Positions 403-39,978 of a stretch of 64,000 bases of DNA are shown piece after piece (within the stretch, counting starts at the first letter, position 1; each line of letters opens with the position of its first letter). Below the pieces are notes generated by a model. The model worked only from the letters and a program-made list of their open reading frames with translations, searched no databases and was not told the origin of the DNA. The DNA is from Mytilus edulis (Eukaryota), in NCBI RefSeq assembly GCF_963676685.1, contig NC_092355.1:67518001-67582000 (forward strand), in the 5' to 3' direction. The translations under genes were made by a program, and so were the position numbers.

Positions 403-551
403 CATCTTCCACTCTATGTGCATATTTGGTCTGATAACCACGACAAAAGTTTGCAATCTTTGAACCGGCATAGGCAAGCAAGTTTTCATTCGACATGCTG
501 GTTTTGGTAAGTCGATAAACATGTGTTGGTAGATGAGGGGCAAATATTTCA
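403..551 (-). CDS. BRICHOS precursor gene A, coding exon 4 (SEIFAPHLPTHVYRLTKTSMSNENLLAYAGSKIANFCRGYQTKYAHRVED); the next exon lies left of the window
   Basis: ttttag acceptor, gtgagt donor, 149 nt, phase 2 in / phase 1 out; same length and phases as the paralogous exon 33558-33706; I-x-x-F-C-x-G-Y resembles the BRICHOS C-terminal Cys motif. Confidence 0.88.
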
Positions 552-2451
552 CTAAAACAGAAATGCAATAATTGTTTTGTAAAACATGCATATATAGACC
601 CAATCAAGATTAAAGAGTAATACGGTGCATGTACTCCATTAAAGGACGTCTTAATCTGTAACTGATTTGTTCAGTTTACAACTTGAATTTCGTTTCAATT
701 TTTTCTGTCATTTTAAAACTTGTTCAAACTTTTACTAATTATTGTTAATAAGGTCGCAATTTGAAACATATGTGAAGTTACTTTAAATTTTTAAAAGTAA
801 GCAGTGCTTAGCATTTTCTAGCCTGGATCAGATAAGCATTTTTGGGCAAATTTGTATGGCTTTTGTATCTTTTGCTTCTGTGATGACTTTTTTTATAGAC
901 GATTCGTGGGTGTTTATTAAATGTTTTTTTCCATAATTTTTTTTTCTTATTTATACATGTTATATACAACGATAATTCAATAAAGCTGTTGAACCAATTG
1001 TTCCTTTCCAATGGTGGGGTAAAAGTCGCCCATAAGTACGATCTGATTGTCGTAGTCACTATGTCGACCTCATTCTATTTATTGACACATCACCCAATGT
1101 TTCCTACAATTGAGTTCTTTCTTACCACGTGTAACAAATTGAATAGAAACTGCTCATTCGCGTGTAAATGATGAGGTTTTTTTTTTTAATTTCAATTGCT
1201 TTGTAAAATATTCGTTGTTTTTTTCCCTGTTTTACCATTGTTTCGTCAGTTTCTTTATTGTTTTTCATTAAGGATGTACACCTAGATGAGCCGAAATCTT
1301 TTTGAGTAAACATTTTTTAGTGATCCAGATTCAAGGGTTGATATATATATGACTAAGAAAGTAATTGATTAAGACAAAATCAGACATCTATTGTTTTGCT
1401 ACGGTCATTAAACGTTTTTAATAATTTTCCCATTTTTCATCAATTGTTAACCATTTTTTGGCGACAATCATGAAAACAATCACATTACTTGTTAACAAAC
1501 TTCATACTCAAAGACTGATTATTGTAAGTGCACATTTTTTACACTCCGTTTAGTACGTATAAAAATATTTTGTTCTAAATTCATCGATACTTTCCACTTG
1601 TGTCACATGTTAATGAAATTATTCCCGAACGAGATATTACAAGAACGAACCATCAGAAGAATAGATCCTTTCGGAGTTGCTGCTTCCTCCTTAATTTGTT
1701 TGTTCATCCTCTTTACAAACTGCGTATAATGATATTCATAAACGTATAAGGTGATCTAATAGCTTTTCTCGTTTTCTGAAAGTATTTTTCGAGCTATCTA
1801 TGCTATTGAATTTCAACAATCGATTGAGTAACTTTTTTTTCTAATTACATTCTATTACTTTTACGTATACATTACTATCAAATTGAGCTCAGTGCCTAGC
1901 TAGAGTTACCAATTTTATCTCTCATGTTATCTCGCTTGAACTTTTATTTTGTCATGTTGGAGAATTTAGAAGCTGACGATACGGTTTTGTTTTTGAAGCG
2001 GACGATACGGTTTTGATTTTGAGCACTTAAGGGACGTTGGTTTTAAATTCCACACCAGTTAGACTCTAGTTTAGAGTAGATCTATTTGCACCAATACCAA
2101 ATCTCCTATTTGTGTATGGTGACATGCAGTTTTTACAATAATCGAAAATAGCACAGTATAAAAAAAAACTATAATAAAGAACTTTATAAATAAAAGGCTG
2201 TCATTGTTTTAAGTTTATATGTGCCGTCTACATTACATAGACAACCCTTTTTCTTCCTTGTTTTCTACATGCTATTGCTGCAATCAGTTTAATAAATAGG
2301 TGCATAAATGGGTAATCTCGCTGTCTTTAAGACATTTTGCATATCAAATTCATACGGTTATTCTGATTCTATCCAAAACAAACCTTTTTGTTGTGTCTTA
2401 ATTTTTCGGCGTGTTTGTATTGTACATTAAGTACTAATAAATTTACATTAC

Positions 2452-2552
2452 CTTGTCATGTTATGCAGTCGAGTACTTAGTTCTGCAAGATCTTCGTCCA
2501 TATGAATAACATAACAAATTCCAGCATCTATCCGTTTAAAGGCTAGTTTTTG
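2452..2552 (-). CDS. BRICHOS precursor gene A, coding exon 3 (QKLAFKRIDAGICYVIHMDEDLAELSTRLHNMT)
   Basis: ttcag/gtaatg splice sites, 101 nt, phase 0/2; LAFK...GICYV resembles the first BRICHOS Cys motif; paralog at 34266-34366. Confidence 0.88.
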
Positions 2553-2843
2553 CTGAATTGAAGAAGAACATATATGGAGATATACACCATTCATACTATT
2601 CGTCACAATTTAAAAACAAATCTTACGACGTTGTTAAACGAGTTCGTAAGTTAAGAAACAACCAATACATGATCAGTGTAGTGTTATTGGCCATGCAATT
2701 GAACCTAGACGTAATAGTTCAACATTTATTTAGTACTTTACCCCTCTCTTTTGGTGTTATCAATTAGATAGTGGCATAAGACAAAATAACAAAATACAAT
2801 CCGATAACTGTTTAGTAGTAAAGTAAATTGTAAGTGAACATAC

Positions 2844-2996
2844 CATATTAAAGTCATGAAGATTAACGGTACTTGAGAATGTTGGTCCAAGATGGCTGAC
2901 TCCACCAACAGTGACCACAAATGTGTTTTTCTCAAGATCGAGAACGAAATCTACGTTAACTGGTTTCCCGTCAACTTTCACAACTGCTCTAAAGTT
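2844..2996 (-). CDS. BRICHOS precursor gene A, coding exon 2 (NFRAVVKVDGKPVNVDFVLDLEKNTFVVTVGGVSHLGPTFSSTVNLHDFNM)
   Basis: tttacag/gtatgt splice sites, 153 nt, phase 0/0; ends in HDF, the conserved BRICHOS Asp motif; paralogs at 35933-36085 and 9748-9904. Confidence 0.88.
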
Positions 2997-4254
2997 CTGT
3001 AAAGCGAAATAATAATAAATGTGTTTGGGAAAATGCTTTAAAATCAGATATAATGCAAAGACGTTAACTAATTTTGTAGACCGAAGTTAGCTTACCGTTA
3101 GTCAAATTTGCCATTATCTCATATACCAAGTCAGGAATATGACAATTGTTATCAAATCGTTTGGTGTGTTTGGGTTTTTGATTTTGCCATTTGATTGGGG
3201 ACTTTCCTCTTTTAATTTTCCGCCGTGTTCGGTGTTTTTGTGATTTTTTGTTAGTACATTGTGAATAGATAATTATTCTGTTATGAGATTTTTCTATTTA
3301 ATTCTGCAAGTCACCTTTACAAGCGTGTAATTGTCAAGCACTAATGTAACAATTTACATGATTGAGTCTAAGTGATTAGTTCTTTGTACTGTATGACATA
3401 ACACATTATCAGCCTTGTATCTTTTGTCATAATGGAGATTCCTCACATTTTTTGTTTACAAATATCAGACACGTTACTATACATTTTGCCTAAGATAAAA
3501 CGGCTTCTTAAAAAACATTCACTTTAAAATGTATGTCTCTAACTTTTTTCTTCAGTTCTTCAAACCATGCCTTTAAATGCAAAACTGTTAACTCAAGTTA
3601 TCTTTTTAAACACATGTTTTGTGATGCATTTTTGCATATTATACTCTGCTCATGTCATGCAATTTCAGGTCAATTCTATCGATTTCTTCAAACGACGATT
3701 TGTGATCAATTTATTATTTTCAACTGTCACGTGTATAATCGTATACAAAATGCCTCGTTTTTGCATTCATAGAGTAGCTTTGTGAATTTAAAAAAAAATT
3801 GAATCATAAGGTACAGCTTACAAGTTGCCTTTATATATACCATGTTGAGATAAAACTAGCGCATGAATGAAAATTGATTAGCTCGTAGTTTTGTATATGA
3901 TGACTTCGGAATAATGACATAAAACCATTAAGCATAGAATTTTTCAAAACTTAAAACAACACGTTATAAACTTTATGCATGCAACGCGCTTTTCTTGAGT
4001 TTCCTTCATCATAAACGGTCAAATTCGAATATGTTAAAGCCAAGGATGTATTAAACCTGAAACAGCTTAACAGTTTTATAATCAACACTATTTTAAATTT
4101 TATTTAGACTGATTGATAACCAGATATAAATATAAAAGGTTAACTTAGGATTTTCATTTTTTTTTTTCATATTTGTCATCGAATAGTATTTTTATTTCTT
4201 ACTTTAGTACACTGCTTCTATATGTAATATAAAGTACAAAAATGTTTAACTTAC

Positions 4255-4305
4255 CTCTGGAAAACATGACACACAGGCAATCAACACTAGGAACAAAATC
4301 ATCAT
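4255..4305 (-). CDS. BRICHOS precursor gene A, coding exon 1: signal peptide (MMILFLVLIACVSCFPE)
   Basis: Hydrophobic signal-like peptide, gtaagt donor in phase 0, gacag acceptor just upstream of the ATG; paralog at 39931-39978. Confidence 0.85.
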
Positions 4306-9747: not shown

Positions 9748-10463
9748 CATATTGGATTCATGCAGATTCATAGTGCTTTTCCATTTTGGTCCAAGGTGGC
9801 TCACATCACCAACATTGACCAACATTGACCAATAACGTGTTCTTCTCAAGATTGAGAACTATATCTTCGTGCACTGGTTTCTCATCAACTTTCACTATTA
9901 CTCTTTTAAAAAATCCCATTCTGTTAGATCCTTTAATTTTTGAACCAATTATAATTATTACAACATTTATGTTCAGAATAAAACTTTGACTTTGATATAC
10001 AACGTGTACAGAACATATGTAAATCATAAATGAGGAGACCTCTTTACCTTATCGTCAGATGAAAATAATCAGTCTTAATTTCGGTCCTGTATCTTCTAAG
10101 ACAGTCAATGAAAAGATAAAGTTTGATTCATTTGTATATGACGATGTGTATAATGGTAACACGATTATGTAGGCTCTTTCGTGAACCTCCCTTTTTTATG
10201 TAAAGAGGCAAACTGCTGGCACTGAATTTTTTAGCGGGAGGAGTTTTGGAACAGGCAGCATGAACGGTTTTCGTATCTAGGTCAAATATGTCAATTTCGG
10301 AATGTTCCAATATTTCGGAATAGCGTGAGTAGTTTGCCCTCTCCATCTTTTAAAACTAATGTGAACATCAATAGGACTACAGCATTTTCTTTAACTAACT
10401 TTGGCAAACTACCCTAATATTCAATTGGAATATAAAGATATTTAACTTAACTTACCTCTGGAG
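9748..10463 (-). pseudogene. BRICHOS precursor pseudogene: exon-2 copy (9748-9904) and a remnant of the exon-1 3' end (10456-10463)
   Basis: RVIVKVDEKPVHEDIVLNLEKNTLLVNV...GDVSHLGPKWKSTMNLHESNM|gtatg with a 10-bp tandem duplication (ggtcaatgtt) that shifts frame, a lost acceptor and HDF changed to HES; ctccagag|gtaagt matches the exon-1 end of genes A and B. Confidence 0.8.
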
Positions 10464-15769: not shown

Positions 15770-16640
15770 GCCCTTCTAAGGAAGAAAGAAACGAAGTTCG
15801 CAATATCGTTCTACTTTACTTTTCGCTATATAGATGATGTTCTCTCACTAAATATTTAAACGAATCTATCCCATCGACCTTGAGATAAAAGATAAAATCA
15901 CAAAAATACTGCTCCGAGGAAAATTCAAAACAGAAACCCCCTAATTAAATTGCAAAATCAAAAGCTCTAACAAATCAAACGATTGGAAAACAACTGTCAT
16001 ATTCCTGACTTGGTACAGACATTTTCTTGTTTAGAAAATGGTGGATTGAACCTAGTTTTATAGCTAGCTAAACCTCCCACTTGCATGGCAGTTTCATCAA
16101 ATTCCATTATATTGACAACGGACATAAGTATAGGGGAACAGCAGTCAACACTGTTATAATCTTAATCACTGTAAGGTAAAGGATACAACATATACAGGTA
16201 AATCTGTCTCATATCTTGACTTACATCTCGAAATTGACATTGAAGTTCGTTTGAAAACATATTTTTACAACAAAAGTGTAATTTGAGCTTCCCAATTGTG
16301 AAATTTTCGTTTCTATGTAGCAACATTCTAGCAGCGCCTGCATAAGGATTACATATCTACTAATTGATACTATATTCCGGGGCTTGTATTTCCTATTATG
16401 ATTCTGCGATAGAGGGTTGCTGCTCACAATGAAGCTATCAAATCAAGAGTTCAAAATGGTGACGTTGATATCATCTTTTTATACATTTTAACGGACACCA
16501 TCGCCTGTTGGTTGACTGTTATGGTATATCCGTTTCACAGATGACTGCAAATATATTCCTAATGTCGTAACTTAATGGGATGTCTCCTTTTCGCGAATGA
16601 ACCTACCGAATTAGACTTTTTACCCAGTTTGTACGAAAAT
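15770..16640 (+). mobile_element. Degenerate Penelope-like RT 3' fragment (interrupted); partly duplicated at about 23155-23620
   Basis: FTFRYIDDVLSL, SYLDLHLEID and FPIV..F..SNI.AAPA-like peptides with frameshifts. Confidence 0.7.
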
Positions 16641-18287
16641 GATCAATATGGTCGTTCGGTAAATCTAAATTAAAATGTATTTACTGTTACTCATTTGAAG
16701 CCTTCTTCTCTATTTAGAAAAGTAATTGTGTTAGATAAGCTTACTGGAGACGTGATGAAACAATTGAAGCTTTTATTTTTCTCTTTGATTACATCAATGT
16801 ACGTTTCGGCAACAAAGTTTTAAGATATGTTGTTGGTAACTATTTCCATAGTTTGTTCCTGTGTTTTGTATTTTTTGTATATTCCTGTACTATTTAAAGT
16901 TAGAATTTATAATTTTTCCTTTATTGTGGTTTGTTGCTGCTTTTCTTATTTTCGTTTTTTTTTGTTACATATTTTCTACATAAGTTTTCTGGCTAGAAAT
17001 ATTTCACATTTGTCATTTCTCATAAATACCCCAAAAAAATAGATGTGGTATATACTCAAAATACTAAAGTGAGAAACCAAATGAAGTTTTTTCGAATCAA
17101 TATAATCTGTTTTAATTTCCCTAATAACTAAGGAGTTATGAAATACTATAAACAAACAAAACTCAAAAATATTTTTTGTTAGCTAAAGAGCATCGAAGAT
17201 TTATTCCGGTTTACAAATAAATATTGTCCATTACTTTATTAGATTGTAAGAAAAATGAATTGAAAGTATAACATAAAAAAATGTCTAACGTATACATCAA
17301 TAGTATGCTTTGAAAGCAAAATAAGTAACACGCAAATTGAAAAAAATAATAATAATGGCGTGTGAGGAAGTTGGTAATTGAATTTCTGTTAAAGTATGAA
17401 ATGAATTGTGCTTGGTGATTATGTCAAAAGAAAGAAAAAAAAGAAAAGTATGATATCTTCTTATATCTATATACTATACATTTAAAGGATAAACTTGGGT
17501 CGTTGAGAAACTTCACACAGCGTTTATTCTTATCACATATAGATATCAATATACACTGGCCACCAAGATTAGGCCCTTCGATAAAAGCTTTTAGCTTAGC
17601 TGTAAAAAAAAATTACAATGTTTTGTGTACACGTTCTGATGTTAACAATTCTATAACCTCATCCCGTATCTAAACGTTATCTGCTAAAAACGACTTGTGT
17701 TTTCAAAATTTTGCTCTTGATGCTCTTGTGACAATACAAAAGCTTCTTCCTACATTTTTAACAATTTCATTTGCATAAATTTCATTTGACAAAATTATTG
17801 CGATTCAACAAACCTAATCCCAGAATCAGTTTGAATAAAGGATGGCTATGTCTCAATTCCGTGAAAACATGTAGTGTATTCGACAAAAAGTAAGAAACAT
17901 CACTCATAACAGGTGTCATGGAGTTTCATTATAGCATGTGATATAATTTGCAGATAATGGTCCAATAAGCATTACATCTAAATATAAATCAGATTTTTTT
18001 TAATGGCACTACATGTAAACAATATGGCAAAAATTTCAAAACAGGAAGAGCCACCTTCCTTAAATATAAATCAGAATGCCAGAAGACAGAAGGGTCTAAA
18101 TACGGTTTACAGCAGCAAAATAAGGTATAAAAAATGCTTACTAAAAGGCAGACAACTACTTATGAAAGGTAATATAAAGTTATTGAATATGTGAATCTAT
18201 TTCGTTTGTTGTCCTCGTAATATGTCAGAAACGTCACGAGTTCAACATATCACTTTAAAATTTATCAAATTGAATGTACTTTTTCAG

Positions 18288-22362: not shown

Positions 22363-24034
22363 GTTCTAGAAGTAGAACTGACCAAATATCTGGTCAGTTC
22401 TAGCTAGAACTGTCAGGATCAGTTCTAGGGTAGAACTGTCAGGATCAGTTCTAGGTAGAACTGTCCAAATCAGTTCTAGGTAGAACTGACCAAATCAGTT
22501 CTAGCTAGAACAGTTCTAACCTAGAACTGACTAAAAGGTGTCAGGCTGACAGTTCTACGTACTGTTCTAGAACAGTTCTCCTGACAGATTTAATGAGAGG
22601 TTAGAAGTGATCTCCACTGTACATGTTCACGACTATATGCTCTAAGTTGTGCAGTTACCTGTGTAAATATCAATTACTTTAAGTGTTAGTTTTAGAGGGA
22701 CAATTGTAAATACATAAAGACTAGATTTTCATTTTATAATGTTATGTATTTATGTTCTAATATTGTATTGCTATAACAATTCGTTATACGTAAAATTCAA
22801 CCAAATCATGGTACGTCACATCCAGTTTTTTACAAAAAAGGGTCGAAAAAACATATGATCGTAAATTCAAAAGTTGCAGTATATTCATCATACTTTTAAT
22901 TGAAGTAAAAAATAAATCTGGGTCATTAACATATAACAAAATCAAAAGCTCTAACAAATCAAACGATTGGAAAACAACTGTCATATTCCTGACTTGGTAC
23001 AGACATTTTCTTATTTAGAAAATGGTGGATTGAACCTGGTTTTATAGCTAGCTAAACCTCCCACTTGCATGGCAGTTTCATCAAATTCCATTATATTGAC
23101 AACGGACATAAGTATAGGAGAACAGCAGTCAACACTGTTATAATCTTAATCACTGTAAGGTAAAGGATACAACATATACAGGTAAATCTGTCTCATATCT
23201 TGACTTACATCTCGAAATTGACATTGAAGTTCGTTTGAAAACATATTTTTACAACAAAAGTGTAATTTGAGCTTCCCAATTGTGAAATTTTCATTTCTAT
23301 GTAGCAACATTCTAACAGCGCCTGCATACGGATTACATATCTACTAATTGAAACTATATTCCGGGGCTTGTATTTCCTATTATGATTCTGCGATAGAGGG
23401 TTGCTGCTCACAATGAAGCTATCAAATCAAGAGTTCAAAATGGTGACGTTGATATCATCTTTTTATACATTTTAACGGACACCATCGCCTGTTGGTTGAC
23501 TGTTATGGTATATCCGTTTCACAGATGACTGCAAATATATTCCTAATGTCGTAACCTAAATCCCGTCCCCTTTTCGCGAATGAACTTACCGAATTAGACT
23601 TTTCACCTAGTTTGTACGAAAATGATCAATATGGTCGTTTGGTAAATCTAAATTAAAATATATTTACTGTTACTCATTTGAAGCCTTCTTCTCTATTTAG
23701 AAAAGTAATTGTGTCAAATAAGCTTACTGGCGACGTGTTGAAACAATTGAAGCTTTTATTTTTCTCTTTGATTACATTAATGTACGTTTCGGCAACAAAG
23801 TTTTAAGATATGTTGTAGGTAACTATTTCCATAGTTTGTTCCTGTGTTTTGTATTTTTTGTATATTCCTGTACTATTTAAAGTTAGAATTTATAATTATT
23901 CCTTTATTGTGGTTTGTTGCTGTTTTTCTTATTTTCGGGGTTTTTTTATTACATATTTTCTATATAAGTTTTCTGGCTAGAAATATTTCACATTTGTCAT
24001 TTCTCATAAATACCAGAAAAAAATAGATGTGGTA

Positions 24035-28049: not shown

Positions 28050-28400
28050 AAAAGAGGGACGAAAGATACCAAAGGGACAGTCAAACTCATAAATCGAAAA
28101 TAAACTAACAACGCCATGGCTAAAAATGAAAAAGACAAACAGACAAACAATAGTACACATGACACAACATAGAAAACTAAAGAATAAACAACACAAACCC
28201 CACCAAAAACTAGGGGTGATCTCAGGTGTTCCGGAAGGGTAAGCAGATTCTGCTCCACATGTGGCACCCATCGTGTTGCTTATGTGATAACAAATCCGGT
28301 AAATAGTCTAATTCGGTAGGTCACATTCATGAAAGGGAAGGGAATTGTAGTTACGAGGTAAGGAACCTATCCGATATCATTTGTGAAACGGTTATTCCAT
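28050..28400 (-). mobile_element. Dispersed repeat (3' end of a Penelope-like element); other copies at about 14650-14797, 34550-34800, 59097-59370 and 59835-59990
   Basis: Shared aaagagggacgaaagataccaaagggacagtcaaactcataaa...ggtaagcagatcctgctccacatgtggcacc sequence; joined to a Penelope RT tail at 34550. Confidence 0.65.
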
Positions 28401-29199
28401 CATATATAAGGTGCATAAAATCCTAGATTATGCACTTTTCTTAAACTTTAAAAGCCCATAGAAAAGTATGTAAACAATTAACATATACATATTTTGCTTG
28501 TGTACCTTCTCTAACAAAGAGTTCTATTCCTTTTGTTTAATTTCAAATGGGTTTCCGCCTGGGATAAAACTGTAAGAAACACACTAATTTATGAATATTT
28601 TTATATATATGCCGAAAAGGGAAATTATAGGATTTCTCAAAATTTGGAAGGACTATTCAATTGTTTGGGTAAGTCGAACAGGAATATTTATCAAATTATC
28701 CTAACCCAACACTTAACCAAAATAATTCGTTTCGTTAAGTATATTTCATAATATAACGATACCGGACATGTTCATGACACGTCACATAGAATAATTGTTG
28801 TTATTGATAACATTCATTCATTCCTCGTCTATCCGAAAAGCCATACATGACAGGAAGCGAGACCAGATAATAAATAATATTATGAAAATGGAATGTGTAT
28901 TTTTTTTTATATATATATACTTTGAAATATCTTTGTATGTAGTTCGTTATTTATTTTATAATTTGATTTTACGGATTTAACCTTAATTGTCGAATCAATT
29001 TGCCAAATAAGCAATATCTAATACTAAATTCATGAAAAATAAACTTCAGAAATACTAAACATTGATAGAAATTAAGAATACAAGTAGATAGACATTAAAA
29101 CTTCTGTAATAAATCGGATCCGCTACATTCAAATAAGTTATTGCAAAAAAAAGAAGCTTTATGAAGCCCAAATTATGACGGCATGAAACACTTTAGATC

Positions 29200-29252
29200 T
29201 CACAAGTGCATATTCCGCTGTGCTTTTGAACATCTTTTGAAGCGCTTTGGGG
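29200..29252 (-). CDS. BRICHOS precursor gene B, candidate terminal exon 5 (APKRFKR/CSKAQRNMHL*)
   Basis: tttgtatttctcaag acceptor (an AAG acceptor is also used by exon 2 of this gene); phase 1 matches the exon-4 donor; gives an R-x-K-R furin site followed directly by Cys. Confidence 0.65.
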
Positions 29253-31531
29253 CTTGAGAAATACAAATGTGATTGTCACAGTTTAATGACTCTCTGTCAT
29301 ATATGTAAACTGGAATATACTGTGCTAGTATATGCAGTTGCTGATGGGATGTTGATTTATATTAACAAACTATTCATGTGTCATTACTTCTGTACTACTA
29401 CTGTAACGCTGGAGCGATGAGACCCCTATTATCACTGGTGTTAAACTGATAACCGTAACTGGAATTACGACGATCCAAATATGGCGACGGCAGAAATAGG
29501 TAAAATCTTTTCAGTCATTTTTCTCAACTGTAGCCCGTTGTTGTCACGAGTTACTCAACTGCAAGGTTTTTGGATATCATTACATCATATTTGAATCGTA
29601 TCGGTGCACTATAATTGTCTAAGCGCTTAGAAAATTGCCGTCGAAAAATTCAGGATTATAATCGTAATTCAATGGCATTTTTCTAGTTTGATCATCGTAA
29701 TTTCTTTATGGGGTAATATAGTAACTGAAAAAATAATAAATGTGTCTTCAAACTTTTTGATGGTATTGTGTGTGTAAAAACAGCAATGTCCAGTTACACG
29801 ATGACATTAACACAAAATAAAAAAAATGAATCAACTTACAGGTTCATATCTTGGACAAACCTTATAAATATATCTCACGATTTATAACAATACATGTATA
29901 TGCATAACCTTTAGCAATATCCAATAGTCCAAAAAGCAATACTATCAAAAATTCATTGCTCCAAATGAAAGTCCAGTATACCACATTTTAATATGCCATA
30001 TGTTTTGCGTCAAATATCGCATATATCCAATCGAAATAATCAATAAAAAGGGCAAATTAACCTCCCCTATCCAATATTCCCTATACTACGGGACTGGCTT
30101 TGGGTTACTTTCTTTATAAATATATAAGTTATAAAACGGATGAGATTTTTGTCTTCGGCAATATATGAAAGAGGAAGTTTATTTTAAATTCCAGCAGCAC
30201 GCCAGGAATGACACCACCCCCTCCCCCGTGCTCTTTACAAGCCTTGTTTATCATAAGTTCCCTTTTGTTTATATTCTGGAATGGGTCCACAAATTTTGAA
30301 GCATTTAAAGGACTAAAAATCACAAATATATATTATATATATATGCGTATTGATAAATTACTTCTTAAGGCAGAATATGTAAATTAACACAGTCGAAACT
30401 GGTTTAATTACAAAGAAACTAATAGATTACCAAACAAATATTTGTTTGCTTCAGGAAAATGCATGACAATTAGAAAGGCTCATTTTCCATTTGATAGAAA
30501 TATACTAAATATATTGTAATTATGCAAGTACAAAACTGTTCCTTGTTACCTTCAATAGTTTCTCTCAACAATAACTACCATGCATATGTATGCATCATTC
30601 TTTTCATATACCAAGTTTTTTTATAATTTCTTGAACTTGTTTCTAGTATGGCGGAATATGCGTTATGATTTCTTTAAACTGAAGACCTTCTTTGAATTAA
30701 TATATCTTGCAAGAAAATTTAAGGCCACACCAATTTGATTAAATGATCTTCGGACCACATAGGAACACAAATTCATGTTTGCCAATGAACTCCACGTTAA
30801 CATTTGCTTAACTTCATAACACACAAAGCACACCAACCTTTCTCTACTATAAATATTATCATTTCATTGATGTTTTTAAAATATATATGTATAGTTATTT
30901 TCTAAAATATTGAAAAAAGTGAAATCACAAAAACACTGAACTCCGAGGAAAATTCAATCGGAAAGTCCTTAATCACATGGCAAATTCAAATTACAAATTA
31001 CATGAAAAATGAAATGACAACAACTGTCATATTCCGGACTTGGTACAGGCATGTAGAAAATGATGGATAGAACCTGATTTTATAGCGCTTAAACTCTCAC
31101 TTGTACAACAGTTTCAACAAATTCCGTTATATTTACAACGATGCGTGAACAAAACAGACATAATGAATAAAAGTCAAAATATGGGTGCAGCAGTCATCAC
31201 TGTGTTACAATTCTAAAAGAAACAATTTTACAAAACAGCACAAAAGCATCTATCAAATTTAAAAAACATGCATTGCGTCACGTGTCTAACGTCAGAAAAC
31301 TTATACGTCACATAGAAAGAAATTTTGTCGTTCAATATTTATACAAAACAATTTCATAATTTCACATTTGGAATGTTGGCATACAGGTTTAAAAATCACA
31401 GTTATGTTAGAATTAGTTTCAGAAATAGACCTAGATTTAAAATTGTACAGAAGTTGTTTAGAATTTCTAAGAATCCACTACTCGATTAAAATAATTTTGT
31501 AGTTTGTCGTTCAACGTATTTTCTAATTTAT

Positions 31532-31660
31532 AATAGAACTATAACATAATGACATACTATAGAACAATAACATAATGACATACTATAGAACAATAACATA
31601 ATGACATACTATAGAACAATAACATAATGACATACTATAGAACAATAACATAATGACATC
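31532..31660. repeat. 26-bp tandem repeat, about 5 copies (atagaacaataacataatgacatact)
   Basis: Seen directly. Confidence 0.9.
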
Positions 31661-31909
31661 TTTTAAAGTACAGAGTCACGTTATAAGAAATAAAGAAACA
31701 CAAAAAGTTGCAAATAAAAAACACACCAGCAAAAATGAAAGATAATACAAACACATTGACGTGATGTATTCAGTACCGAGCCACGTCAAATGGATATCAC
31801 AGAAAACAATCCAAACAGTAAAAGTAATATTAATAATAGAACAAAGACAAATGAAAGAACAATATAACACGTTGTTAAGATGATAAACAACGTCAGTACG
31901 CAGAATCTA

Positions 31910-32530
31910 TTAGTATACATCAAGACCATCATGTATTATTTGTGAAGTTGATACGGAATATTTATCAACAAGGTATTGGTACCTTCCGATGAACTTTTTT
32001 AGAAAAAGAACGAGACGTTCTTTGACATACCCCTGGTTCATCAACTTTCTGCTCAGACACTGGTGACGTTTTACAAAGTCTGAGTAGGAGATGCAAGCTC
32101 TTGAATATTGAATAAGTAGGGAAATGTATATCCCATATGCAGGTGAACTTGGTATATTGCTACTAAGGTGACGGAAATTTATAATTTCAAAATTTAAATC
32201 GTCTCGTTTGTCATAGATTCTCGTACTAAGATGACGGTGTATGTCCAATTCGATGTATAAGTCTAAAATGAGGCGGAGGAAGACGTGTCTGTTGTTTCTT
32301 TAATTTCTAGTTCTTAGTGATATATTAATGGTACCCAATCAGAAACGTTCGGATTGTTTACGGAAAGAACATCCTCAATATATCTGAAAGTAAAATTAAA
32401 TAATCTGGCTTCCTTGGTTGTCTTGTTTTTGACAAGTGTCTGAAGGAACTCCGATTCATCTCACAAAAAGAAGAGGTCGGCAAGGAGAGGCGCATATTTC
32501 GTTCCCATATGAATGCAAACAATTTGTTGA
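31910..32530 (-). mobile_element. Penelope-like retroelement, RT C-terminal half, degenerate
   Basis: IPYGNEICASPCR/FTFRYIEDVLS region, then YDKRDDLNFEIINF..LSSNIPSSPAYGIYIS.LIQYSRAC. Confidence 0.8.
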
Positions 32531-33557
32531 AACGTCAGTGACGGTCATGAAGTAGCTAATCATTTTATAGTATGTATGGGCTATACAACTGTTTACACAT
32601 TCAAAAAGGTGTGATATATGTTTCCAAGTCCCTATTTAAATAAAATACCGAACAATATTTCTTTTTAATTCTAAACATTTAGAAAATCATGATAACATTA
32701 TTTTTTAATTTTCAAAGTTACTCTCATTCCCATATTTCGTATCATTCCTAGTTCCTGGAGATTTAAACATAGTTCGTGTTTTTTCATTTCCAAATTTCTT
32801 GAAGATTGTCCCCCTTTCCATTCCAATTTTAAGATATACTCGTATGTAGCTGTTTACATTAGAACTATTAATCCTTTTTCATACATGTATGCACAAAAAG
32901 AAATACCATAAGATGTTAAAACGTTCCCGTGATTAATTCATCACTATATTTTCATAATATGCTATTTGTAGACAGTTTTTAGTGTCAATATCAATCAAAC
33001 ACTATGCAGTAACGATTATCTTCTTATTCTTTATTTATCGAAATTACGATTATCTTTTTTGGAGTTACAATTATCATCCCGAATTTTCGACGGCAATTTT
33101 CTAAGCGCTTAGACAATTATAGTGCACCGTTACGATTCAAATATGATGTAATGATATAGAAAAACCTTGAAGTTGAGTAACTATTGACAATAACATGCTA
33201 CATTTGAGAAAAAAGAAATGAAAAGATTTTACCTATTTCTGCCGTCGCCATATTGGGATCGTCGTAATTCCAGTTACGGTTACCAGTTTAACACCAGTGT
33301 ATTATACAGCAGGTCATGTGCAGTTATTTATGACTGACAAACATTTTCACCTTGACATAAATACTGATGACATATCAGGTTTCAAACAGGCATAAAATTG
33401 CTAAATTGTAAGATATCTGCATAAAGTAACATCGATTCTTCAATGGTTTTTCCCTATTTGTCAATTTCTAATGACAGTTAAATATATTTTATTTTGTTTC
33501 AAGCATGTTGAATTGTAAGCATAACTCCATTTGAACACAAATATCGCTTTTACTCAC

Positions 33558-33706
33558 CATTTTCAAGTCTGTGTGCGTATACGGATTTATAACCACGACA
33601 AAAATTTGCAATCTTTGGACCAGCATAGGCAAGCAAGTTTTCATTGGTCATGTTTGTTTTGCTTAGTCTGTATACATGCTTTGTTAACTTCGTTGCAAAT
33701 ATTTGG
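33558..33706 (-). CDS. BRICHOS precursor gene B, coding exon 4 (SQIFATKLTKHVYRLSKTNMTNENLLAYAGPKIANFCRGYKSVYAHRLEN)
   Basis: ttttag/gtgagt, 149 nt, phase 2/1; paralog of 403-551. Confidence 0.9.
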
Positions 33707-34265
33707 CTAAAATACAAATTTATGTAACATAGCTCATGTTTAGATATTTCTTTCATATTTGTAAATACGTGTATTAACATTGAGAGAGCTCTTGAAAACT
33801 AACATATAAACAGGAAAACTATGCAAATTTTATCACAAAACATGATTAACCCGCCTCATTTTTTCGCCTGTCCCTAGTCAGGAGCCTCTTACCTTTTTTA
33901 GTTGTTTTTCTTAATTTAAGTTTATTAATATATTTTTGGTATAGCGTCCAATTCCAATGACCTACTATACAATTTGTTTAGGGGCTATCTGAAGCCTCAT
34001 TGAATTTATCGCTCTTTTGAAGACCCATTGGTAGATATAGCTTTCGGTTTTTTTCGGTTTTTTTGTCAGGTTGTTGTCTCATTGATACATTCACCATTTC
34101 CATTCTCAATTTCATGTCCATTTGTCTTTATGTAAATATGAGTTTTGTGTCTTTCATTAAACACTTGCAGTTTTGGCAAACGAGTTGCGTTTACTAGGCT
34201 TCTTGAGCAAACTATTATAAACCTCTGCCATATTCCTTTTGTTAAAAGATTATTATTTATATTAC

Positions 34266-34366
34266 CTTGTCATATTATAAAGTCGGGCACTTATTTCAGC
34301 AAGATTCTCTGTCATTAGAGTAACATAGCAAATTCCTTCGTCTACTTTCTTTAAGGCTAGTCTGTT
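34266..34366 (-). CDS. BRICHOS precursor gene B, coding exon 3 (NRLALKKVDEGICYVTLMTENLAEISARLYNMT)
   Basis: ttcag/gtaat, 101 nt, phase 0/2; paralog of 2452-2552. Confidence 0.9.
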
Positions 34367-35932
34367 CTGAATACAGTTAGAAAAAGAAATACCTTGATTT
34401 TAAATATTTTCATCCAATTGTGTAAAATAAAATGAAAAGAAAAATGAAAAATGAAAAGAAACACATTACATCCACTGTTTGATTTTGCACTTTTTAAGCG
34501 TATTGTTTGTATTCAAGAGATCCAATTGGTGAAGTTTTAATCATCACTTCTTAAATATTACGGACGCCATCATGATTTGGTTGACCGTTATGGAATATTC
34601 GTTATACAGATGATATCGGAGTTCCTTATGTCGTAACAACAACCCCCTTCCCTTTTCACGAATGTGACCTATCGAATTAGACTATTACCTGGCTTTGTAA
34701 CAACATAAGCAGCACGACGGGTGCCACATGTGGAGTAGGGTCTGCTTACCCTTCCAGAGCACCTGAAATCACACCTAGTTTTTTGTGGGGTCTGTGTTGT
34801 TTTTGTACCCCTATTTGTGATATTTTGTTCAAGCATCATTGTCAATATAATGGAAATTGATGCGACTATCGTACAAGTGAGAGGTTTAGTGATGTAAAAG
34901 CAGGTTCAATCCATCATTTTCTACATTTTAGAATGCCTGTACTAAGTCAGGAATATGACAGTTGTTGTCCATTCGTTTAATGTGTTTTATGATTTGTTAT
35001 AAAATTTGATTAAGGACTTTCTGTTTTGCATTTCCCTTGGAGTTCAGTATTTTTTTGTTATTTTACTCTTTGCAATTCATTTTGAGATGAAAAGACTGCA
35101 AATTTTAAGGAAATCACTTGCAAAATATGCAATTACAACTAATACGTGTACACTCCAGATGCTCACATTTTACATAAACTTTGCCAAGATGAGGTTCTAT
35201 AAACGTGCGGATGTTATAACTGGAATTTAGAAGAAATAATTACATGTAAAAATTGAGCATCCATATTTATTATGTTGTTATATATTAAAATTAATGATGT
35301 CATGATTAACTAATTATGGACATCGGATAGACTGTACAAGATATTTTGTGAAATGTACATATTGTCTTGTTTAAATAAAAAGTAGCATTGAAGCTATATT
35401 ATTGGTTTAAACTTTCACTTTAAAAATATGTCGATGAAAAGAACATAATTATTGGTAAGAGTAATATTAGACTTGTTTTCTTCTGTAAACTATTCAGTAT
35501 TGTATATTTATCAAATTTGTTTTATGTGTATCAAATATTGCAGTAAATTCATAAAGCTTACTTGTATATTTGTCAAAACTAGATATATATTTCTCAAATT
35601 TAGTCGATACATTTGTATATTTATTCTTGATTTATTTTATATCTATTTTATATTTATCTTATATCTATTTCATATTTATCTCATATCTATTATATATTTA
35701 TTTCCTATTTATTTTATATGTATTTCATATTTATTTAATTTTTATTTAATGTTTATTTTATTTTTATTTAAAATTTATTTCATTTTTATTTCATATTTAC
35801 TCAATCTTTCTGTTGTATTCATAACATTAGTTTTTATTTTTGTAATTCGGTTTTGATATATTTGTTTAGTTTTCAAATATAATTTTTACTAGAATGTAGA
35901 ACGAAATGCTACAGTTTTATGTGTATACATAC

Positions 35933-36085
35933 CATATTGAAATCATGAAGATTTATGGTCCTTGACCAGTTTGGTCCAAGATGGTTCACCTCACCGATAT
36001 TGACAAGAAATGTTTTCCTTTCAATGTCAAGAACTAAATCTTCATTCACTGGTTTACCGTCCACTTTAATAATAACTCTAAAGTT
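35933..36085 (-). CDS. BRICHOS precursor gene B, coding exon 2 (NFRVIIKVDGKPVNEDLVLDIERKTFLVNIGEVNHLGPNWSRTINLHDFNM)
   Basis: tttcaag/gtatgt, 153 nt, phase 0/0; paralog of 2844-2996. Confidence 0.9.
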
Positions 36086-36156
36086 CTTGAAATAAAAATG
36101 AAAGTTTGTTTTAGTGATATTTGACGTTACCTAGCATTTATATATCTCTCTCTATT

Positions 36157-36909
36157 CACTGGTGTTAAACTGGTCATCGTAATTGCAGTTAAGATACAAC
36201 TGGCATATAAGGATCGTAATGGTGCTATCTGGATAAATTTATCGGTTTTTAAGAGACAAATTGGCAGCGCGTCATCCCTACAATGGCTTCCATTTCTACG
36301 GTTGTAAACATGAACTGGTGTAATGCCTAATGGGGACATAGTTTTGTCGAAGTAGAATCCTGACGGTTAAATAATGTGTGAACATGGAAAATGTTTGCCT
36401 TTCTTTGTGTTCATGATGAACATTTACTGTAAATTATGACTTGTAAAATATAAATACTATATCTACAAAGCATACAGTATATTAGTAAATTATTTACTAT
36501 TTCATTTTCTAGGCACACTATCAAACATTCAAACACGAATTATATATAGAGAAAGTTAGGATCATCACTAACAAGTTACTAGGATCATCACTAACAAGTT
36601 AATATGATCATGGCCAAGTTACGACCTTCTTATAATCACGTTACGGCTATCATAACAAACAAAATTCTTGGAGTTACAATGATATTCCGTAAATTTTCAA
36701 TGGCTTTTTTTTCGGTAACAAGGTCACATATGATATTAAGAACACATACATTCAACAATACCGTACACATCAACCTAGCGGCTGAGTAGTTCTGTAAAAA
36801 ACGCTTGTACACGGAGAAATTACAAAAAGACGATGTTTTTCCTATTTTGGGCTCCGCCATGTTGGTATCACCGTAACTGCAATTATGGTCATCAGTTTAA
36901 CACCAGTTG
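36157..36909. mobile_element. 750-bp non-autonomous element with CACTGGTGTTAAACTG TIRs
   Basis: cactggtgttaaactggtcatcgtaattgcagtta ... taactgcaattatggtcatcagtttaacaccagttg; CTATT on both flanks. Confidence 0.8.
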
Positions 36910-39141
36910 CTATTGGGTTTTGTCCTGTGGTGCAATCGGAAAGAAATAGTATTTCCAATTACGCTTGAATTATACTAAAATTTTACCTTAACGACAAAGT
37001 GTATACTAGATAGAGTATGTACTATCAAAACAAATATTTTGTTACCGACTTTATTGCCAAATTAAAAACAATATGGAACTATAAACAAATGTCACACCAG
37101 TGGGCTTTTATCCACTATTATCATCAAAAATTGCTTGTTCCAAGTCAGGAATGTGGCAGTTGTTTTTGGACTATACTCGTTAATTTGTAACGTTTCCATT
37201 TTTACATAGTCTTTGATAAAAACAGGCTTTGTAAACATACATTGGTAACGTTTTTCCTTACATTTCTTTCGTAGAATAGGCTATACATGTATAAGCATAC
37301 TATATATGACAATAACTTTCTTGCTACCTGTGTCTGACAATCACTTTCTTGCTACCTGTGTCTGACAATAACTCAAAGACTAAATATACCAATTTTCATG
37401 ACACTTTGGTGGTTTTTTTTATTTCTATCAATTTTCGATTTTTATACATTTTGTATTTAACGTTTTAGAAGTATTGCATTTTATTCGTAAAAAAGAAGAC
37501 GATTTTTTTCAGTTTTCGGACAATAACTCAAAAACGATTTAGTAGTTTTTATGACACTTTGGTGACTGGTTTATGTACACTAAGTCTTAAATGTAATCAT
37601 TATAACACGGTACTTATACCTTTGGGTATTGTCTATATTGGTACAACCATTGATTTTGTTTGCAATTAAATGCCGCATACCTAATAATATCTAAGACAGG
37701 ATTTACAAAATAGAGAATAATTAGTCACAGAAATAAAGAATATAAACAAATATGATGCTACAATATTACAGAATAATAGACAACAACTTATAGAAATTAA
37801 ACCTTCCTAATCCACATCCGCATGCATTACTATACAGGTATGATCACATACAGTTCTATATCTCCTGTTGATACTTAAAACTTTTGCATTGTAAAGGTCA
37901 ATCCTTTTTCAGATTTTTTTATTAAATCTTAAAAGTAAATGAATTTTGTAAGAAGTTTTTATAAATATATATATCATCATCATGACAAGAGGATATAGTA
38001 TTTCAATTCTAAATATGCATATATTAATGTAATTCCATTTATAACGTGAAGACAGTTGTTGTTGGTGGCTGTTTGTCTTGTTTGTTTCTCATTTATTATT
38101 TCAATTATATGTTAATCGGTCTGATTTACATGGGTTTTTGTCTGAATCGATTGTCGGACCGTTTATTGCTACAATCTATTGATTTTGCTCATTGTAAGAG
38201 ATCACACGATGAACACCAGTTGCTTACATTCACATCAGTTGTTATTTAGTGAACAGTTATACCTATAGGTATTTGGTTTCAGTTATGTTCAAATTACGTA
38301 TGTAATGTATTTCGGATATAACTGTATTGTATTTAAAGCTCGGACGTCATTAATTGGTGATTTGATTGTCACAAATGAATTTTACTGGCGACGCGTTAGC
38401 AGAGCCAGTAAACGGGTATTTGCGACCTTCAAATCACTAATTGATGCCGTTGGAGCTTAAAATGCAATATTGTTATCTCCCTACTAATGAAACTGACAGA
38501 AAACAACCTCAAATCATATATTTAGAATCTGCTATCTGTCGTCTGCGCCTGCGCGTACATTTCCATAGCATCAATTGTCAATTGATGCCATGAAAATTTA
38601 TGACGTTAAATAAAATTGAACGTTACAAGCGATGTTGCATTAGAATTATTTATATACTAGAAAACAGTAATATACTGAACTCCGTAATATGAGTGATTCA
38701 AAGATAGATTACATAAAAATATATGTCTACACATAATGTATCATATTAGACCATCACGTTTCAGTTCATATGCATCATCGATTTTTAAATATTTTTTGAC
38801 TTTTGGACGTTCCTTGTGAAGGTGAATTTATGAACGCTTCGGAGGCTAGATAACGTATTAACTGTTTTCATCTTTTAATTAAGTAACATTTTTCACAGTG
38901 TAGAAAATAAAACGGAAATCAATTAAGGTGCAAAAGACAGAAAATCTTTTAGTTTCGTTATTTATCGCCTTGGTCTAATATCTGATTCATAATACAATTG
39001 ATGTATTCATTTTGGGACCGCTTGCATTTTAAAAGGTCCTGTATTTCATGAACTTTTTTTTTTATTTTTTGATGTTGCATTGTCAAAATAAAGGAACCAA
39101 TACTATGATAAAAAGAAAATCCGTGTAACACACTTGTCTGA

Positions 39142-39862
39142 AGCTGGGGTCACACATTCACGATTTTTACTGCCGTCCTTGACAGGACCATTCCCGATTA
39201 AAATTTATCAAAAGTCTGATCAAGATCCTATGAATCGTGGATGTAAATTCAAACTTTAAAAATTTAATCACGACAACAATCAGATATTGTTCAGGAAGCG
39301 CCGATATTCAACCGTTTCCAAGCGAATTTATCCCGATAATCCCGTTCTAAATCCGCTTCTAATCCGATTTTTATCTTTCGCCAGGTAAAATTCGACCGAG
39401 TCTGTCACGACTGCGTCCCGATTCTACCGAATGTAATCCGACAGAGATCAGATAGTGACAAGACAGTGAACCGACGCTGACGGAAGTTATCCGTTCGAAC
39501 AAATTTCTCCAGATCATTCCCGTTCCACAGGACACCGTCCCGAATACACAGAACATTGTTAGGAATTCGATCCGATACAGCAGAATCTGTCACGACATAG
39601 GCACGATTGTAATACGACTAGACAAAATCGGCTGAGTTTCCCCGAATGTTACGGGACGCACCTAACTGTCGGGGTGCTTTGCCGAACTATTCGGACCCTT
39701 CCCGACCAGTAGGAATCTGTTACGAACTTAAACGACTGCGTTCAGACAATAATAGGACATTCCAGATAATTGAGGATACTAATCCGACTTTTTAACTTTT
39801 CGTGTCGTATCGCTGTCTGATCTCAAACGGGAGTAATAATCGGCAATGTGTGAACCCCGCAT
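39142..39862. mobile_element. Harbinger/PIF-like MITE
   Basis: agctggggtcacacatt ... aatgtgtgaaccccgcat termini; related copies at 41219-42818. Confidence 0.7.
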
Positions 39863-39930
39863 TAGCCGTTTGAATTAGTTTAATAACATTCCGACTGTTT
39901 AAATCCCAATATATCTGTTAGAACATTTAC

Positions 39931-39978
39931 CTCTGGAGAACAGGACACACTTGCAATCATCAAAATGAATAAAATCAT
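39931..39978 (-). CDS. BRICHOS precursor gene B, coding exon 1: signal peptide (MILFILMIASVSCSPE)
   Basis: Paralog of 4255-4305; gtaaat donor in phase 0; tttcacag acceptor 6 nt upstream of the ATG. Confidence 0.87.

What the first reader, a model, noticed from the sequence alone, without database searches (positions are those of the whole stretch)
29173..39978. Secreted BRICHOS precursor with a furin-released Cys peptide: candidate uncharacterised bivalve host-defence peptide system
Seen: five phase-compatible exons (48, 153, 101, 149, 53 nt) splice into about 167 aa: signal peptide, beta-rich linker, BRICHOS-like domain (HDFNM, GICYV, IANFCRGY), then APKRFKR and CSKAQRNMHL. The ORF track does not show this gene. 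Known: BRICHOS chaperone + proprotein-convertase site + short C-terminal Cys peptide is the layout of polychaete antimicrobial peptides (arenicin, alvinellacin, capitellacin, nicomicin) and of ITM2B/Bri2. The classical mussel AMP families (mytilin, myticin, defensin, myticalin, mytimacin) do not use BRICHOS. Inference: this is a molluscan BRICHOS-peptide family. I do not know of it being characterised but cannot rule that out. Exon 5 is the least certain part.
Basis: partly seen in the sequence, partly recalled or inferred. Interest (0 to 1): 0.85.

Follow-up and report, generated by a model that had tools for sequence, protein, structure and literature searches.

The report
Secreted mussel BRICHOS gene, wrong last exon

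Summary
Exons 1-4 on the minus strand (39978-39931, 36085-35933, 34366-34266, 33706-33558) are real. They have GT/AG sites. Spliced RNA-like contigs from three studies show the exon 3/4 joint and carry the end of exon 2 next to exon 3. The RefSeq protein XP_071143656.1 (Mytilus edulis, 152 aa) equals exons 1-4 letter for letter.

The product is a divergent BRICHOS protein. Pfam PF04089 gives E 2e-4 and 21.8 bits, below the 25-bit cut-off; the tandem paralog reaches 25.0-25.4. The conserved Asp and two Cys are present. The nearest language-model clusters are gastrokines. A weak model fits the proSP-C BRICHOS structure (Z 5.5, 2.9 A over 71 of 77 residues).

No joint lands there, it has no homolog in any paralog, and transcripts leave exon 4 for sequence (…GDLDRR|DFMMSP…) found neither in the window nor in the assembly.

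Relatives have a conserved terminal exon: a dibasic RR site, then a 21-29 aa tail with a CxC motif and net charge 0 to -2. So "BRICHOS + convertase site + short Cys tail" holds for the family, which is the ordinary BRICHOS layout. A cationic antimicrobial peptide is not supported.

The scan's first readers had also noted this tandem cluster (s1-834861, same window) and BRICHOS-like genes on other pieces of this genome.

The parts
39931..39978 (-). Exon 1 coding part: ATG plus a 16-residue hydrophobic signal-type leader (MILFILMIASVSCSPE), donor GTAAAT. A TATAAATA lies about 45 nt upstream of the ATG.
   Evidence: Residues 1-16 of P0006. The same leader occurs in paralog and ortholog proteins.
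35933..36085 (-). Exon 2 (153 nt, phase 0): N-terminal beta strands and the start of BRICHOS, ending in NLHDFNM with the conserved Asp64.
   Evidence: The loose end beyond 34367 in the X1 contig equals the end of this exon. There are 14 exon-2-like matches in the own genome.
34266..34366 (-). Exon 3 (101 nt): GICYV strand with the first conserved Cys (C80), helix 1, and the invariant NMT sequon.
   Evidence: Joint 33706->34266 in X1, X2 and X4..
33558..33706 (-). Exon 4 (149 nt): helix 2 with the second conserved Cys (IANFCRGY, C137) and the last strand. Donor G|GTGAGT.
   Evidence: The donor position and phase are identical in paralog A.
33550..33557 (-). Read-through of the exon 4 donor (…G-E-stop, TAA at 33552-33550), used as the CDS end in the RefSeq model. 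AATAAA follows at 33493. The RNA contigs examined show no depth for this form.
   Evidence: P0006 ends …HRLENGE. Polyadenylation signal. Depth in bin 33400-33599 is fully accounted for by exon 4 letters 33554-33599 in X2 and X4, and to within about 2 in X1.
29200..29252 (-). Not part of the transcripts; most likely a chance open frame behind an AG.
   Evidence: No joint, only colinear low-depth contigs. The DNA is unique in the genome and has no paralog counterpart.
403..4305 (-). Tandem paralog A, exons 1-4 (4305-4255, 2996-2844, 2552-2452, 551-403), with the same exon sizes and phases. Its exon 5 (DEIHRR|ALLQQVSDNVVCGCDVIKMII-stop) lies outside the window at G000:C12:67516734-67516814 (L039:8734-8814). 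It matches the paralog-A protein cluster P0001/P0008 (XP_071143655.1; UniRef name 'BRICHOS domain-containing protein') at 91-97% per exon.
9748..9904 (-). Remnant of a third family copy: exon 2 only, with an internal overlap or duplication, an in-frame TGA, and HDFNM changed to HESNM. Pseudogene.

Best explanation
The locus is a real, transcribed gene of a Mytilus-restricted, tandemly duplicated family of small secreted single-BRICHOS proteins. These resemble gastrokines in architecture.

Shown:
They encode a 16-residue leader, three N-terminal strands and a BRICHOS domain with the family's Asp (D64) and Cys pair (C80, C137).
From the exon 4 donor it goes to a terminal exon that reads G-D-L-D-R-R-D-F-M-M-S-P… and is missing from this assembly.
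- The homologous terminal exon of the neighbouring paralog (DEIHRR|ALLQQVS(D/N)NVVCGCDVIKMII), of another chromosome-12 copy (DKVHRR|ALLRQISDDFVCRCEFIEFV) and of the M. trossulus ortholog (DMNLRRR|FAPAEAAKAPTVLCSCSEHIMYEGNNQDK) all begin with a conserved dibasic site. A short CxC tail follows: hydrophobic in the two chromosome-12 paralogs, mildly hydrophilic in the ortholog.

Inferred mechanism:
- The leader takes the protein into the ER.
- BRICHOS folds, with a C80-C137 disulfide, and acts as the intramolecular chaperone of the aggregation-prone tail, as in Bri2 and other BRICHOS proteins.
- A dibasic-specific proprotein convertase cuts after RR and releases a tail of about 20-30 residues plus a free BRICHOS domain.
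- What the tail does is unknown. Its charge and composition argue against a classical cationic membrane-lytic peptide.
For: Gene structure and expression:
- Splice joint 33706->34266 in three runs, at depths 510, 19.5 and 30.
- Exon 2 letters follow directly after exon 3 in the contig.
- P0006 = XP_071143656.1 equals exons 1-4.

BRICHOS:
- PF04089 is the best and only sizeable Pfam hit for all six family proteins, over nearly the full profile. P0006 scores 21.8 bits (E 2.2e-4); P0001, P0008 and P0010 score 25.0-25.4 bits against a cut-off of 25.
- D64, C80 and C137 are invariant and are kept in the chromosome 10 and 5 paralog exons.
- The top three ESM Atlas clusters are gastrokine-1 and gastrokine-2 (0.92, 0.91, 0.90; 199, 194 and 189 shared features).
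- The AF2 model from a 20-row alignment has the order strand x6, helix, helix, strand.
- It aligns to 2YAD proSP-C BRICHOS at Z 5.5, rmsd 2.9 A, 71 of 77 residues, tied for first of 48,161 chains.
- 8RNU Bri2 BRICHOS is rank 2 in Foldseek.

Terminal exon:
- The loose end at 33554 reads on as TTTAGATAGACGTGACTTTATGATGTCACC in transcript sense.
- That 30-mer is absent from the window and from the genome.
- Family exon 5 sequences are.
- The chromosome 5 paralogs also end the BRICHOS exon with KKLRR, NKQRR or RQKR.

General model: BRICHOS as chaperone of a beta-prone C-terminal peptide released at a convertase site (PMC9714404, PMC10182729, PMC10745061).
Against: - The target's own Pfam score is below the gathering cut-off.
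- The structural model is of low confidence (mean pLDDT 49), and Z 5.5 is within the range of chance fold resemblance.
- Only 30 nt of the true terminal exon of this gene were seen, so its tail and any Cys in it are unknown.
- The runs are only guessed to be RNA. The spliced joint is the argument that they are.
- The transcripts could come from an allele or an unassembled near-identical copy rather than from the assembled haplotype.
- Cleavage at RR, the disulfide and the chaperone role are inferred, not shown.
- A transcript of another family member (P0005, Logan) reads through the exon 4 donor (…GEIKL-stop), so tail-less isoforms may be real.
Confidence: 0.75

Rival explanations
1. Exon 4 splices to 29252, giving a 167-aa precursor from which furin releases the single-Cys peptide CSKAQRNMHL, a new bivalve host-defence peptide.
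For: The frame is phase-compatible, the acceptor TTTCTCAAG is acceptable, and APKRFKR is a good basic site.
Against: - No joint to 29252 appears in any of four runs, and the contigs over the site are colinear with the genome.
- The spliced contigs go elsewhere from exon 4.
- The segment has no counterpart in paralog A or elsewhere, although exons 1-4 are all conserved.
- A 10-residue peptide with one Cys and net charge +2 does not resemble any BRICHOS-derived AMP (PMC6265681).
Confidence: 0.02
2. In the assembled haplotype the gene has lost its terminal exon and makes a tail-less 'solo BRICHOS' protein. This is the RefSeq model: read-through …ENGE-stop, polyadenylated at AATAAA 33493. It would act in trans as a secreted anti-amyloid or mucosal chaperone, like gastrokine-1.
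For: - No family-type exon 5 lies anywhere downstream in the window or in the genome.
- A stop lies 2 codons after the donor and a polyadenylation signal 65 nt further on.
- RefSeq chose this model.
- A Logan transcript of a sister gene, P0005, also reads through (…GEIKL).
- Gastrokines are the nearest clusters by language-model features.
- Gkn1 is reported as a secreted anti-amyloid and anti-biofilm protein (PMC12919244).
Against: The contigs show no depth in 33400-33553 beyond what exon 4 explains, so the read-through form is not seen where the gene is highly expressed. The strong GTGAGT donor is conserved with the paralog. The missing exon may be an assembly or haplotype gap.
Confidence: 0.2
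3. The family's real tail peptides, released after RR, are antimicrobial: a molluscan counterpart of the polychaete BRICHOS-AMPs with a different, non-cationic chemistry.
For: - The precursor logic is the same: leader, BRICHOS, dibasic site, C-terminal Cys peptide (PMC6265681).
- The tails diverge fast between paralogs and species while BRICHOS is conserved.
- The gene family shows tandem birth and death.
- A 'BRICHOS domain-containing protein' is listed among the up-regulated, putatively PSP-responsive transcripts of mussel digestive gland (PMC4203926). Its identity with this gene is not established.
Against: - Tail net charge is 0 and -2, and the pro-region is +1 to +4 rather than acidic.
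- A CxC spacing cannot staple a beta-hairpin the way arenicin-type Cys pairs do.
- No activity data exist.
- A review states that BRICHOS-AMPs are known only from polychaetes (PMC9756803).
Confidence: 0.1

Closest known systems
Gastrokines (GKN1, GKN2, GKN3), vertebrate secreted BRICHOS proteins
   Same: Cleavable leader rather than a membrane anchor. One BRICHOS domain. Total size about 150-185 aa. Nearest clusters by language-model features.
   Different: No significant sequence similarity and no orthology shown. The mussel family has a conserved RR site and a CxC tail encoded by a separate terminal exon. The tissue of expression is unknown.
Polychaete BRICHOS-AMP precursors (arenicins, alvinellacin, capitellacin, nicomicins, HfBRI peptides)
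   Same: Signal peptide, then a BRICHOS pro-region, then a dibasic site, then a short C-terminal Cys-containing peptide (PMC6265681, PMC10745061).
   Different: In polychaetes the pro-region is acidic and the peptide is strongly cationic, with a beta-hairpin or helix plus Rana-box. Here the pro-region is slightly basic and the known tails are neutral or acidic with adjacent CxC cysteines. No antimicrobial data exist.
Bri2/ITM2B (and Bri3), with a furin-released 23-residue C-terminal peptide
   Same: BRICHOS followed by a convertase site and a peptide of about 20-30 residues, beta-prone and Cys-containing, that BRICHOS is thought to chaperone (PMC9714404). 8RNU Bri2 BRICHOS is rank 2 in Foldseek.
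   Different: Bri2 is a type II membrane protein with a long linker. The mussel proteins are short and have a cleavable leader. The site is RR rather than a strict R-x-K/R-R furin motif.
RefSeq and UniProt records of the same family
   Same: XP_071143656.1 (M. edulis, 'uncharacterized protein') is this gene's exons 1-4. XP_071143655.1 / VDI22609.1 / A0A8B6DPW4 ('BRICHOS domain-containing protein') is paralog A. XP_063406241.1 is the M. trossulus ortholog.
   Different: The RefSeq model of this gene ends by read-through (GE-stop) and lacks the terminal exon that the transcripts show. None of these records is functionally characterised.

Membership tests
BRICHOS domain superfamily (Pfam PF04089) | Match to the Pfam BRICHOS profile at or above the gathering score (25 bits) | tested here: inconclusive
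   The target product P0006 scores 21.8 bits, E 2.2e-4, residues 56-140 on profile 2-87/91, which is below the cut-off. Paralog-A proteins score 25.0-25.4 bits, at or above the cut-off. All six family proteins have BRICHOS as their best hit. Single exons gave no hit.
BRICHOS domain superfamily (Pfam PF04089) | Strictly conserved Asp at the end of strand 2, and two conserved Cys (strand 4 and helix 2) (PMC9714404, PMC6265681) | tested here: met
   D64 (NLHDF), C80 (GICYV) and C137 (NFCRGY) are invariant in 7 proteins. They are kept in the chromosome 10 and 5 paralog exons where those exons were recovered: NLHD[FY], GIC, FC..Y. In the model D64 ends strand 59-64, C80 lies in strand 79-84, and C137 follows helix 131-136.
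BRICHOS domain superfamily (Pfam PF04089) | BRICHOS fold: anti-parallel sheet flanked by two helices | tested here: inconclusive
The AF2 model has mean pLDDT 49 and pTM 0.40, with the element order expected for BRICHOS. VIA-align places 2YAD at Z 5.5, rmsd 2.9 A, 71 of 77 residues, 20% identity, tied for top of 48,161 chains. Foldseek places 8RNU at rank 2 (E 0.048) and 2YAD at rank 25, neither significant.
BRICHOS domain superfamily (Pfam PF04089) | N-terminal signal peptide or signal anchor | tested here: met
   There is a 16-residue leader with a hydrophobic core (mean Kyte-Doolittle 2.7 over residues 1-12) and a small-residue c-region SVSCS. It is conserved in the family. No SignalP was available, so the cleavage position is not predicted.
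BRICHOS domain superfamily (Pfam PF04089) | Convertase site followed by a short C-terminal, beta-prone mature peptide | tested here: inconclusive
   Not present in the window for this gene. It is present in its transcripts as …GDLDRR|DFMMSP… (30 nt seen). It is also present in the paralogs and the ortholog, as RR or RRR plus a 21-29 aa CxC tail.
Polychaete-type BRICHOS antimicrobial peptide precursors | Acidic pro-region and strongly cationic mature peptide | tested here: not met
   Pro-region net charge is +1 to +4. Tail charge is 0 (paralog A) and -2 (M. trossulus ortholog). The target's own tail is unknown beyond DFMMSP.
Polychaete-type BRICHOS antimicrobial peptide precursors | Cys pair(s) spaced so as to staple a beta-hairpin or a Rana-box loop | tested here: not met
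The tails carry CGC, CRC or CSC, that is two Cys separated by one residue.
Polychaete-type BRICHOS antimicrobial peptide precursors | Demonstrated antimicrobial activity of the released peptide | not testable with these tools
   This needs synthesis and MIC assays.
Gastrokines | Orthology or significant sequence similarity to vertebrate GKN1-3 | tested here: not met
   No gastrokine appeared in the exhaustive phmmer search with exon 4 (4 hits, all mussel-like or spurious) or in the word-based searches. The only link is language-model feature similarity.

The most novel reading that the evidence does not exclude
Mussels have a lineage-specific family of BRICHOS precursors that release short CxC peptides of neutral or acidic net charge, some of them hydrophobic and beta-prone, at a conserved RR site. 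This would be an undescribed class of bivalve secreted peptides (self-assembling, amyloid-like, or unconventional host-defence or signalling peptides). The peptide-encoding exon would be subject to presence/absence variation between haplotypes, so that some alleles make only the free BRICHOS chaperone.
Probability: 0.15. Interest if true: 0.6.

Novelty: new member of a known kind. Interest (0 to 1): 0.3.

Why it matters
BRICHOS-derived bioactive peptides are so far documented in invertebrates only for polychaetes (PMC9756803). A mollusc family with the same precursor logic would widen that picture, and it offers natural BRICHOS/client pairs for work on anti-amyloid chaperones. As it stands, the evidence shows an ordinary, already catalogued but uncharacterised BRICHOS gene family. 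The peptide that made the finding exciting does not exist in the transcripts. The practical gains are a corrected gene model and a flag that this assembly and its RefSeq model lack the gene's true last exon.

Tried and rejected
- Pfam on single exons gave no hits. It was uninformative because the domain is split over three exons.
Instead I used the database protein P0006, which a search returned and which equals exons 1-4.
- AF2 with 7 close sequences failed (pLDDT 32.6).
- A PDB sequence-profile search found no BRICHOS entry.
- Foldseek gave no significant match.
- I searched for the transcripts' downstream 30-mer in the window with up to 3 mismatches, as 12-16-mers, as a peptide, and in the whole assembly. 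All were negative.
- One 12-mer hit at 19811 was inspected and is chance.
- A JGI metagenome scan for a 26-letter part of that 30-mer found nothing.
- tblastn and blastn with the paralog and ortholog exon 5 found no counterpart downstream of exon 4. Paralog homology is confined to the exons.
- The supplements of PMC4203926 hold no BRICHOS sequence.
- P0004, a 2881-aa phmmer hit, is a PKD-domain protein from a JGI/IMG record with no BRICHOS match, and is spurious.
- The raw RNA run X21 (organism B) had no reads on exons 3-4, so it says nothing.
- An alternative donor 4 nt downstream (GTGA|GTAAAA) was considered. I rejected it in favour of the homologous G|GTGAGT donor, because the transcript's next letters (GTGATTTAGATAGACG…) align with the start of paralog A's exon 5 (ATGAGATTCACAGACGG).
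Full report
**What is there**

The window is AT-rich eukaryotic DNA, about 31% GC. It comes from a 1.37-Gb assembly, at G000:C12:67518001-67582000. The five segments have the stated sizes, phases and GT/AG borders.

**Exons 1-4 are real**

I laid the contigs of three runs from three different studies of the same organism label on 28400-34399.
- One spliced contig per run shows the joint 33706->34266. It skips 559 nt, with GT..AG on the minus strand, at depths 510, 19.5 and 30.
- The X1 contig continues past 34367 with the reverse complement of the end of exon 2, so the exon 2/3 junction is as drawn.
- These runs are only guessed to be RNA. The spliced joint is what marks them as cDNA.
- A database search returned XP_071143656.1, "uncharacterized protein [Mytilus edulis]" (P0006, 152 aa). 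It contains the four exon translations contiguously, then reads through the exon 4 donor for two codons, …ENGE-stop.

P0006 served as the spliced product.

**It is a BRICHOS protein**

- Single exons gave nothing in Pfam.
- P0006 matches PF04089 over almost the whole profile (2-87 of 91) at E 2.2e-4 and 21.8 bits, below the 25-bit cut-off.
- The products of the neighbouring paralog reach 25.0-25.4 bits, and every family protein has BRICHOS as its best hit.
- The Asp and the two Cys that define the superfamily (PMC6265681, PMC9714404) are invariant: D64, C80, C137. They persist in the more distant paralog exons on chromosomes 10 and 5.
- The nearest ESM Atlas clusters are gastrokine-1 and gastrokine-2, at 0.92, 0.91 and 0.90.
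- AlphaFold failed with 7 rows (pLDDT 32.6). With 20 rows, including paralog exon fragments, it reached pLDDT 49 and pTM 0.40, with the BRICHOS order of elements.
- That weak model aligns to the proSP-C BRICHOS crystal structure 2YAD at Z 5.5, rmsd 2.9 A, over 71 of 77 residues. This ties for the top of 48,161 chains.
- Bri2 BRICHOS (8RNU) is rank 2 in Foldseek, without significance.

Taken together I rate BRICHOS as well supported. The structural part is only suggestive.

- No joint reaches 29252. The only contigs over 29200-29455 are colinear with the genome at depth about 3.
- The spliced contigs stop matching at 33554. They go on for 111 letters (X1), 546 letters (X2) and 25 letters (X4) that lie nowhere in 28400-33553.
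- The first 30 of these letters, in transcript sense, are TTTAGATAGACGTGACTTTATGATGTCACC. With the preceding GTGA they read G-D-L-D-R-R-D-F-M-M-S-P.
- This 30-mer is absent from the window and from the whole assembly with up to 3 mismatches. A 26-letter part of it found nothing in a metagenome scan.
- Depth in bin 33400-33599 equals contig depth x 46/200 in X2 and X4, and does so to within about 2 in X1. So there is also no visible read-through into the intron.

**What the real C-terminus looks like**

The gene has a tandem paralog in the window, with exons at 4305-4255, 2996-2844, 2552-2452 and 551-403. Sizes, phases and donors are identical. Its fifth exon lies 1.6 kb further on, just outside the window. 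That exon encodes DEIHRR-ALLQQVSDNVVCGCDVIKMII-stop and is followed by AATAAA.
- This matches XP_071143655.1 and its orthologs in M. galloprovincialis and M. trossulus.
- Another chromosome-12 copy has DKVHRR-ALLRQISDDFVCRCEFIEFV.
- The M. trossulus ortholog of the target has DMNLRRR-FAPAEAAKAPTVLCSCSEHIMYEGNNQDK.
- The target's transcript letters align with the start of the paralog's exon 5.
- The chromosome 5 relatives end their BRICHOS exon with KKLRR, NKQRR or RQKR directly before a GT.

A basic convertase-type site after BRICHOS, followed by a short variable Cys tail, is thus a family trait. It is also the general BRICHOS layout (PMC9714404).

**Why not an antimicrobial peptide**

- The known tails have net charge 0 and -2, and mean hydropathy +1.1 and -0.4.
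- The two Cys are separated by one residue.
- The pro-regions are +1 to +4.
- Polychaete BRICHOS-AMPs have an acidic pro-region and a strongly cationic hairpin or helix (PMC6265681).
- The paralog tail (ALLQQVSNNVVCGCDVIKMII) instead looks like the beta-prone, aggregation-prone client that BRICHOS domains are thought to chaperone (PMC10182729, PMC10745061).

**Most likely mechanism (inferred)**

1. The leader directs ER entry.
2. BRICHOS folds with the C80-C137 disulfide, and the invariant NMT sequon is glycosylated.
3. BRICHOS shields the tail.
4. A dibasic convertase cuts after RR.
5. The tail and the free BRICHOS domain are secreted.

**Open point**

The terminal exon seen in the transcripts is not in this assembly. 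Three explanations remain: the assembled haplotype lacks it, giving a tail-less allele as the RefSeq model implies; the assembly has a gap there; or the RNA comes from an unassembled near-identical copy. A Logan transcript of a sister gene (P0005) ends …GEIKL by read-through, so tail-less isoforms may exist.

**Distribution and literature**

An exhaustive phmmer search of 1.84 billion representatives with exon 4 found only mussel-like sequences and one spurious hit, a PKD-domain protein from a JGI/IMG record. Word-based searches found four protein clusters, all Mytilus or Logan. I found no paper on molluscan BRICHOS peptides. One review says BRICHOS-AMPs are known only in polychaetes (PMC9756803). 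A mussel digestive-gland study lists an unidentified "BRICHOS domain-containing protein" among its up-regulated, putatively PSP-responsive transcripts (PMC4203926).

**Verdict**

The gene and the BRICHOS call are right. The terminal exon and its peptide are wrong. The antimicrobial reading is unsupported. This is a new, uncharacterised member of a known kind, of modest interest.

Noticed in passing
window 403-4305 (-) plus G000:C12:67516734-67516814 (L039:8734-8814): An intact tandem paralog with the same five-exon plan. Its product is the 178-aa protein that UniRef calls 'BRICHOS domain-containing protein', with the tail DEIHRR|ALLQQVSDNVVCGCDVIKMII. Homology to the target is confined to the exons, so the duplication is old.
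   Followed up: yes
window 9748-9904 (-): A lone exon-2 remnant of a third copy, with an internal overlapping duplication, an in-frame TGA and loss of the conserved Asp (HESNM). No other exons of it are in the window. A Logan transcript (P0005) looks like an intact relative of this copy.
   Followed up: partly
G000:C5:11.46-11.58 Mb (L017-L023) and G000:C10:9.37 Mb, 27.70 Mb (L003, L005, L006, L020): More distant BRICHOS-like paralog clusters. The chromosome 5 copies end the BRICHOS exon with KKLRR, NKQRR or RQKR immediately before a GT donor, so a basic site after BRICHOS is shared beyond the chromosome 12 cluster.
   Followed up: partly
window 30800-31200, 31800-32400, 33800-34200: Intronic repeats with very high depth and many variant letters in all RNA-like runs (up to about 2000). 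These are expressed dispersed repeats, not exons of this gene. An ORF of 112 aa lies at 31910-32248 (-).
   Followed up: no
window about 16067-16878 and 23051-23861: Identical peptide matches at a constant offset of about 6984 nt point to a segmental duplication of about 7 kb between the two BRICHOS genes.
   Followed up: no
window 35452-35856 (+): A 134-aa low-complexity open frame made of a repeated unit of about 26 nt inside intron 2. This is a minisatellite, not a gene.
   Followed up: no
G000:C12:67443024-67443089 (L040) and 67476040-67476792 (L036): Further copies of exon 4 and exon 5 of the family upstream of the window, one with the tail Cys changed (VVSGCD). These are more birth-and-death debris of the cluster.
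   Followed up: partly
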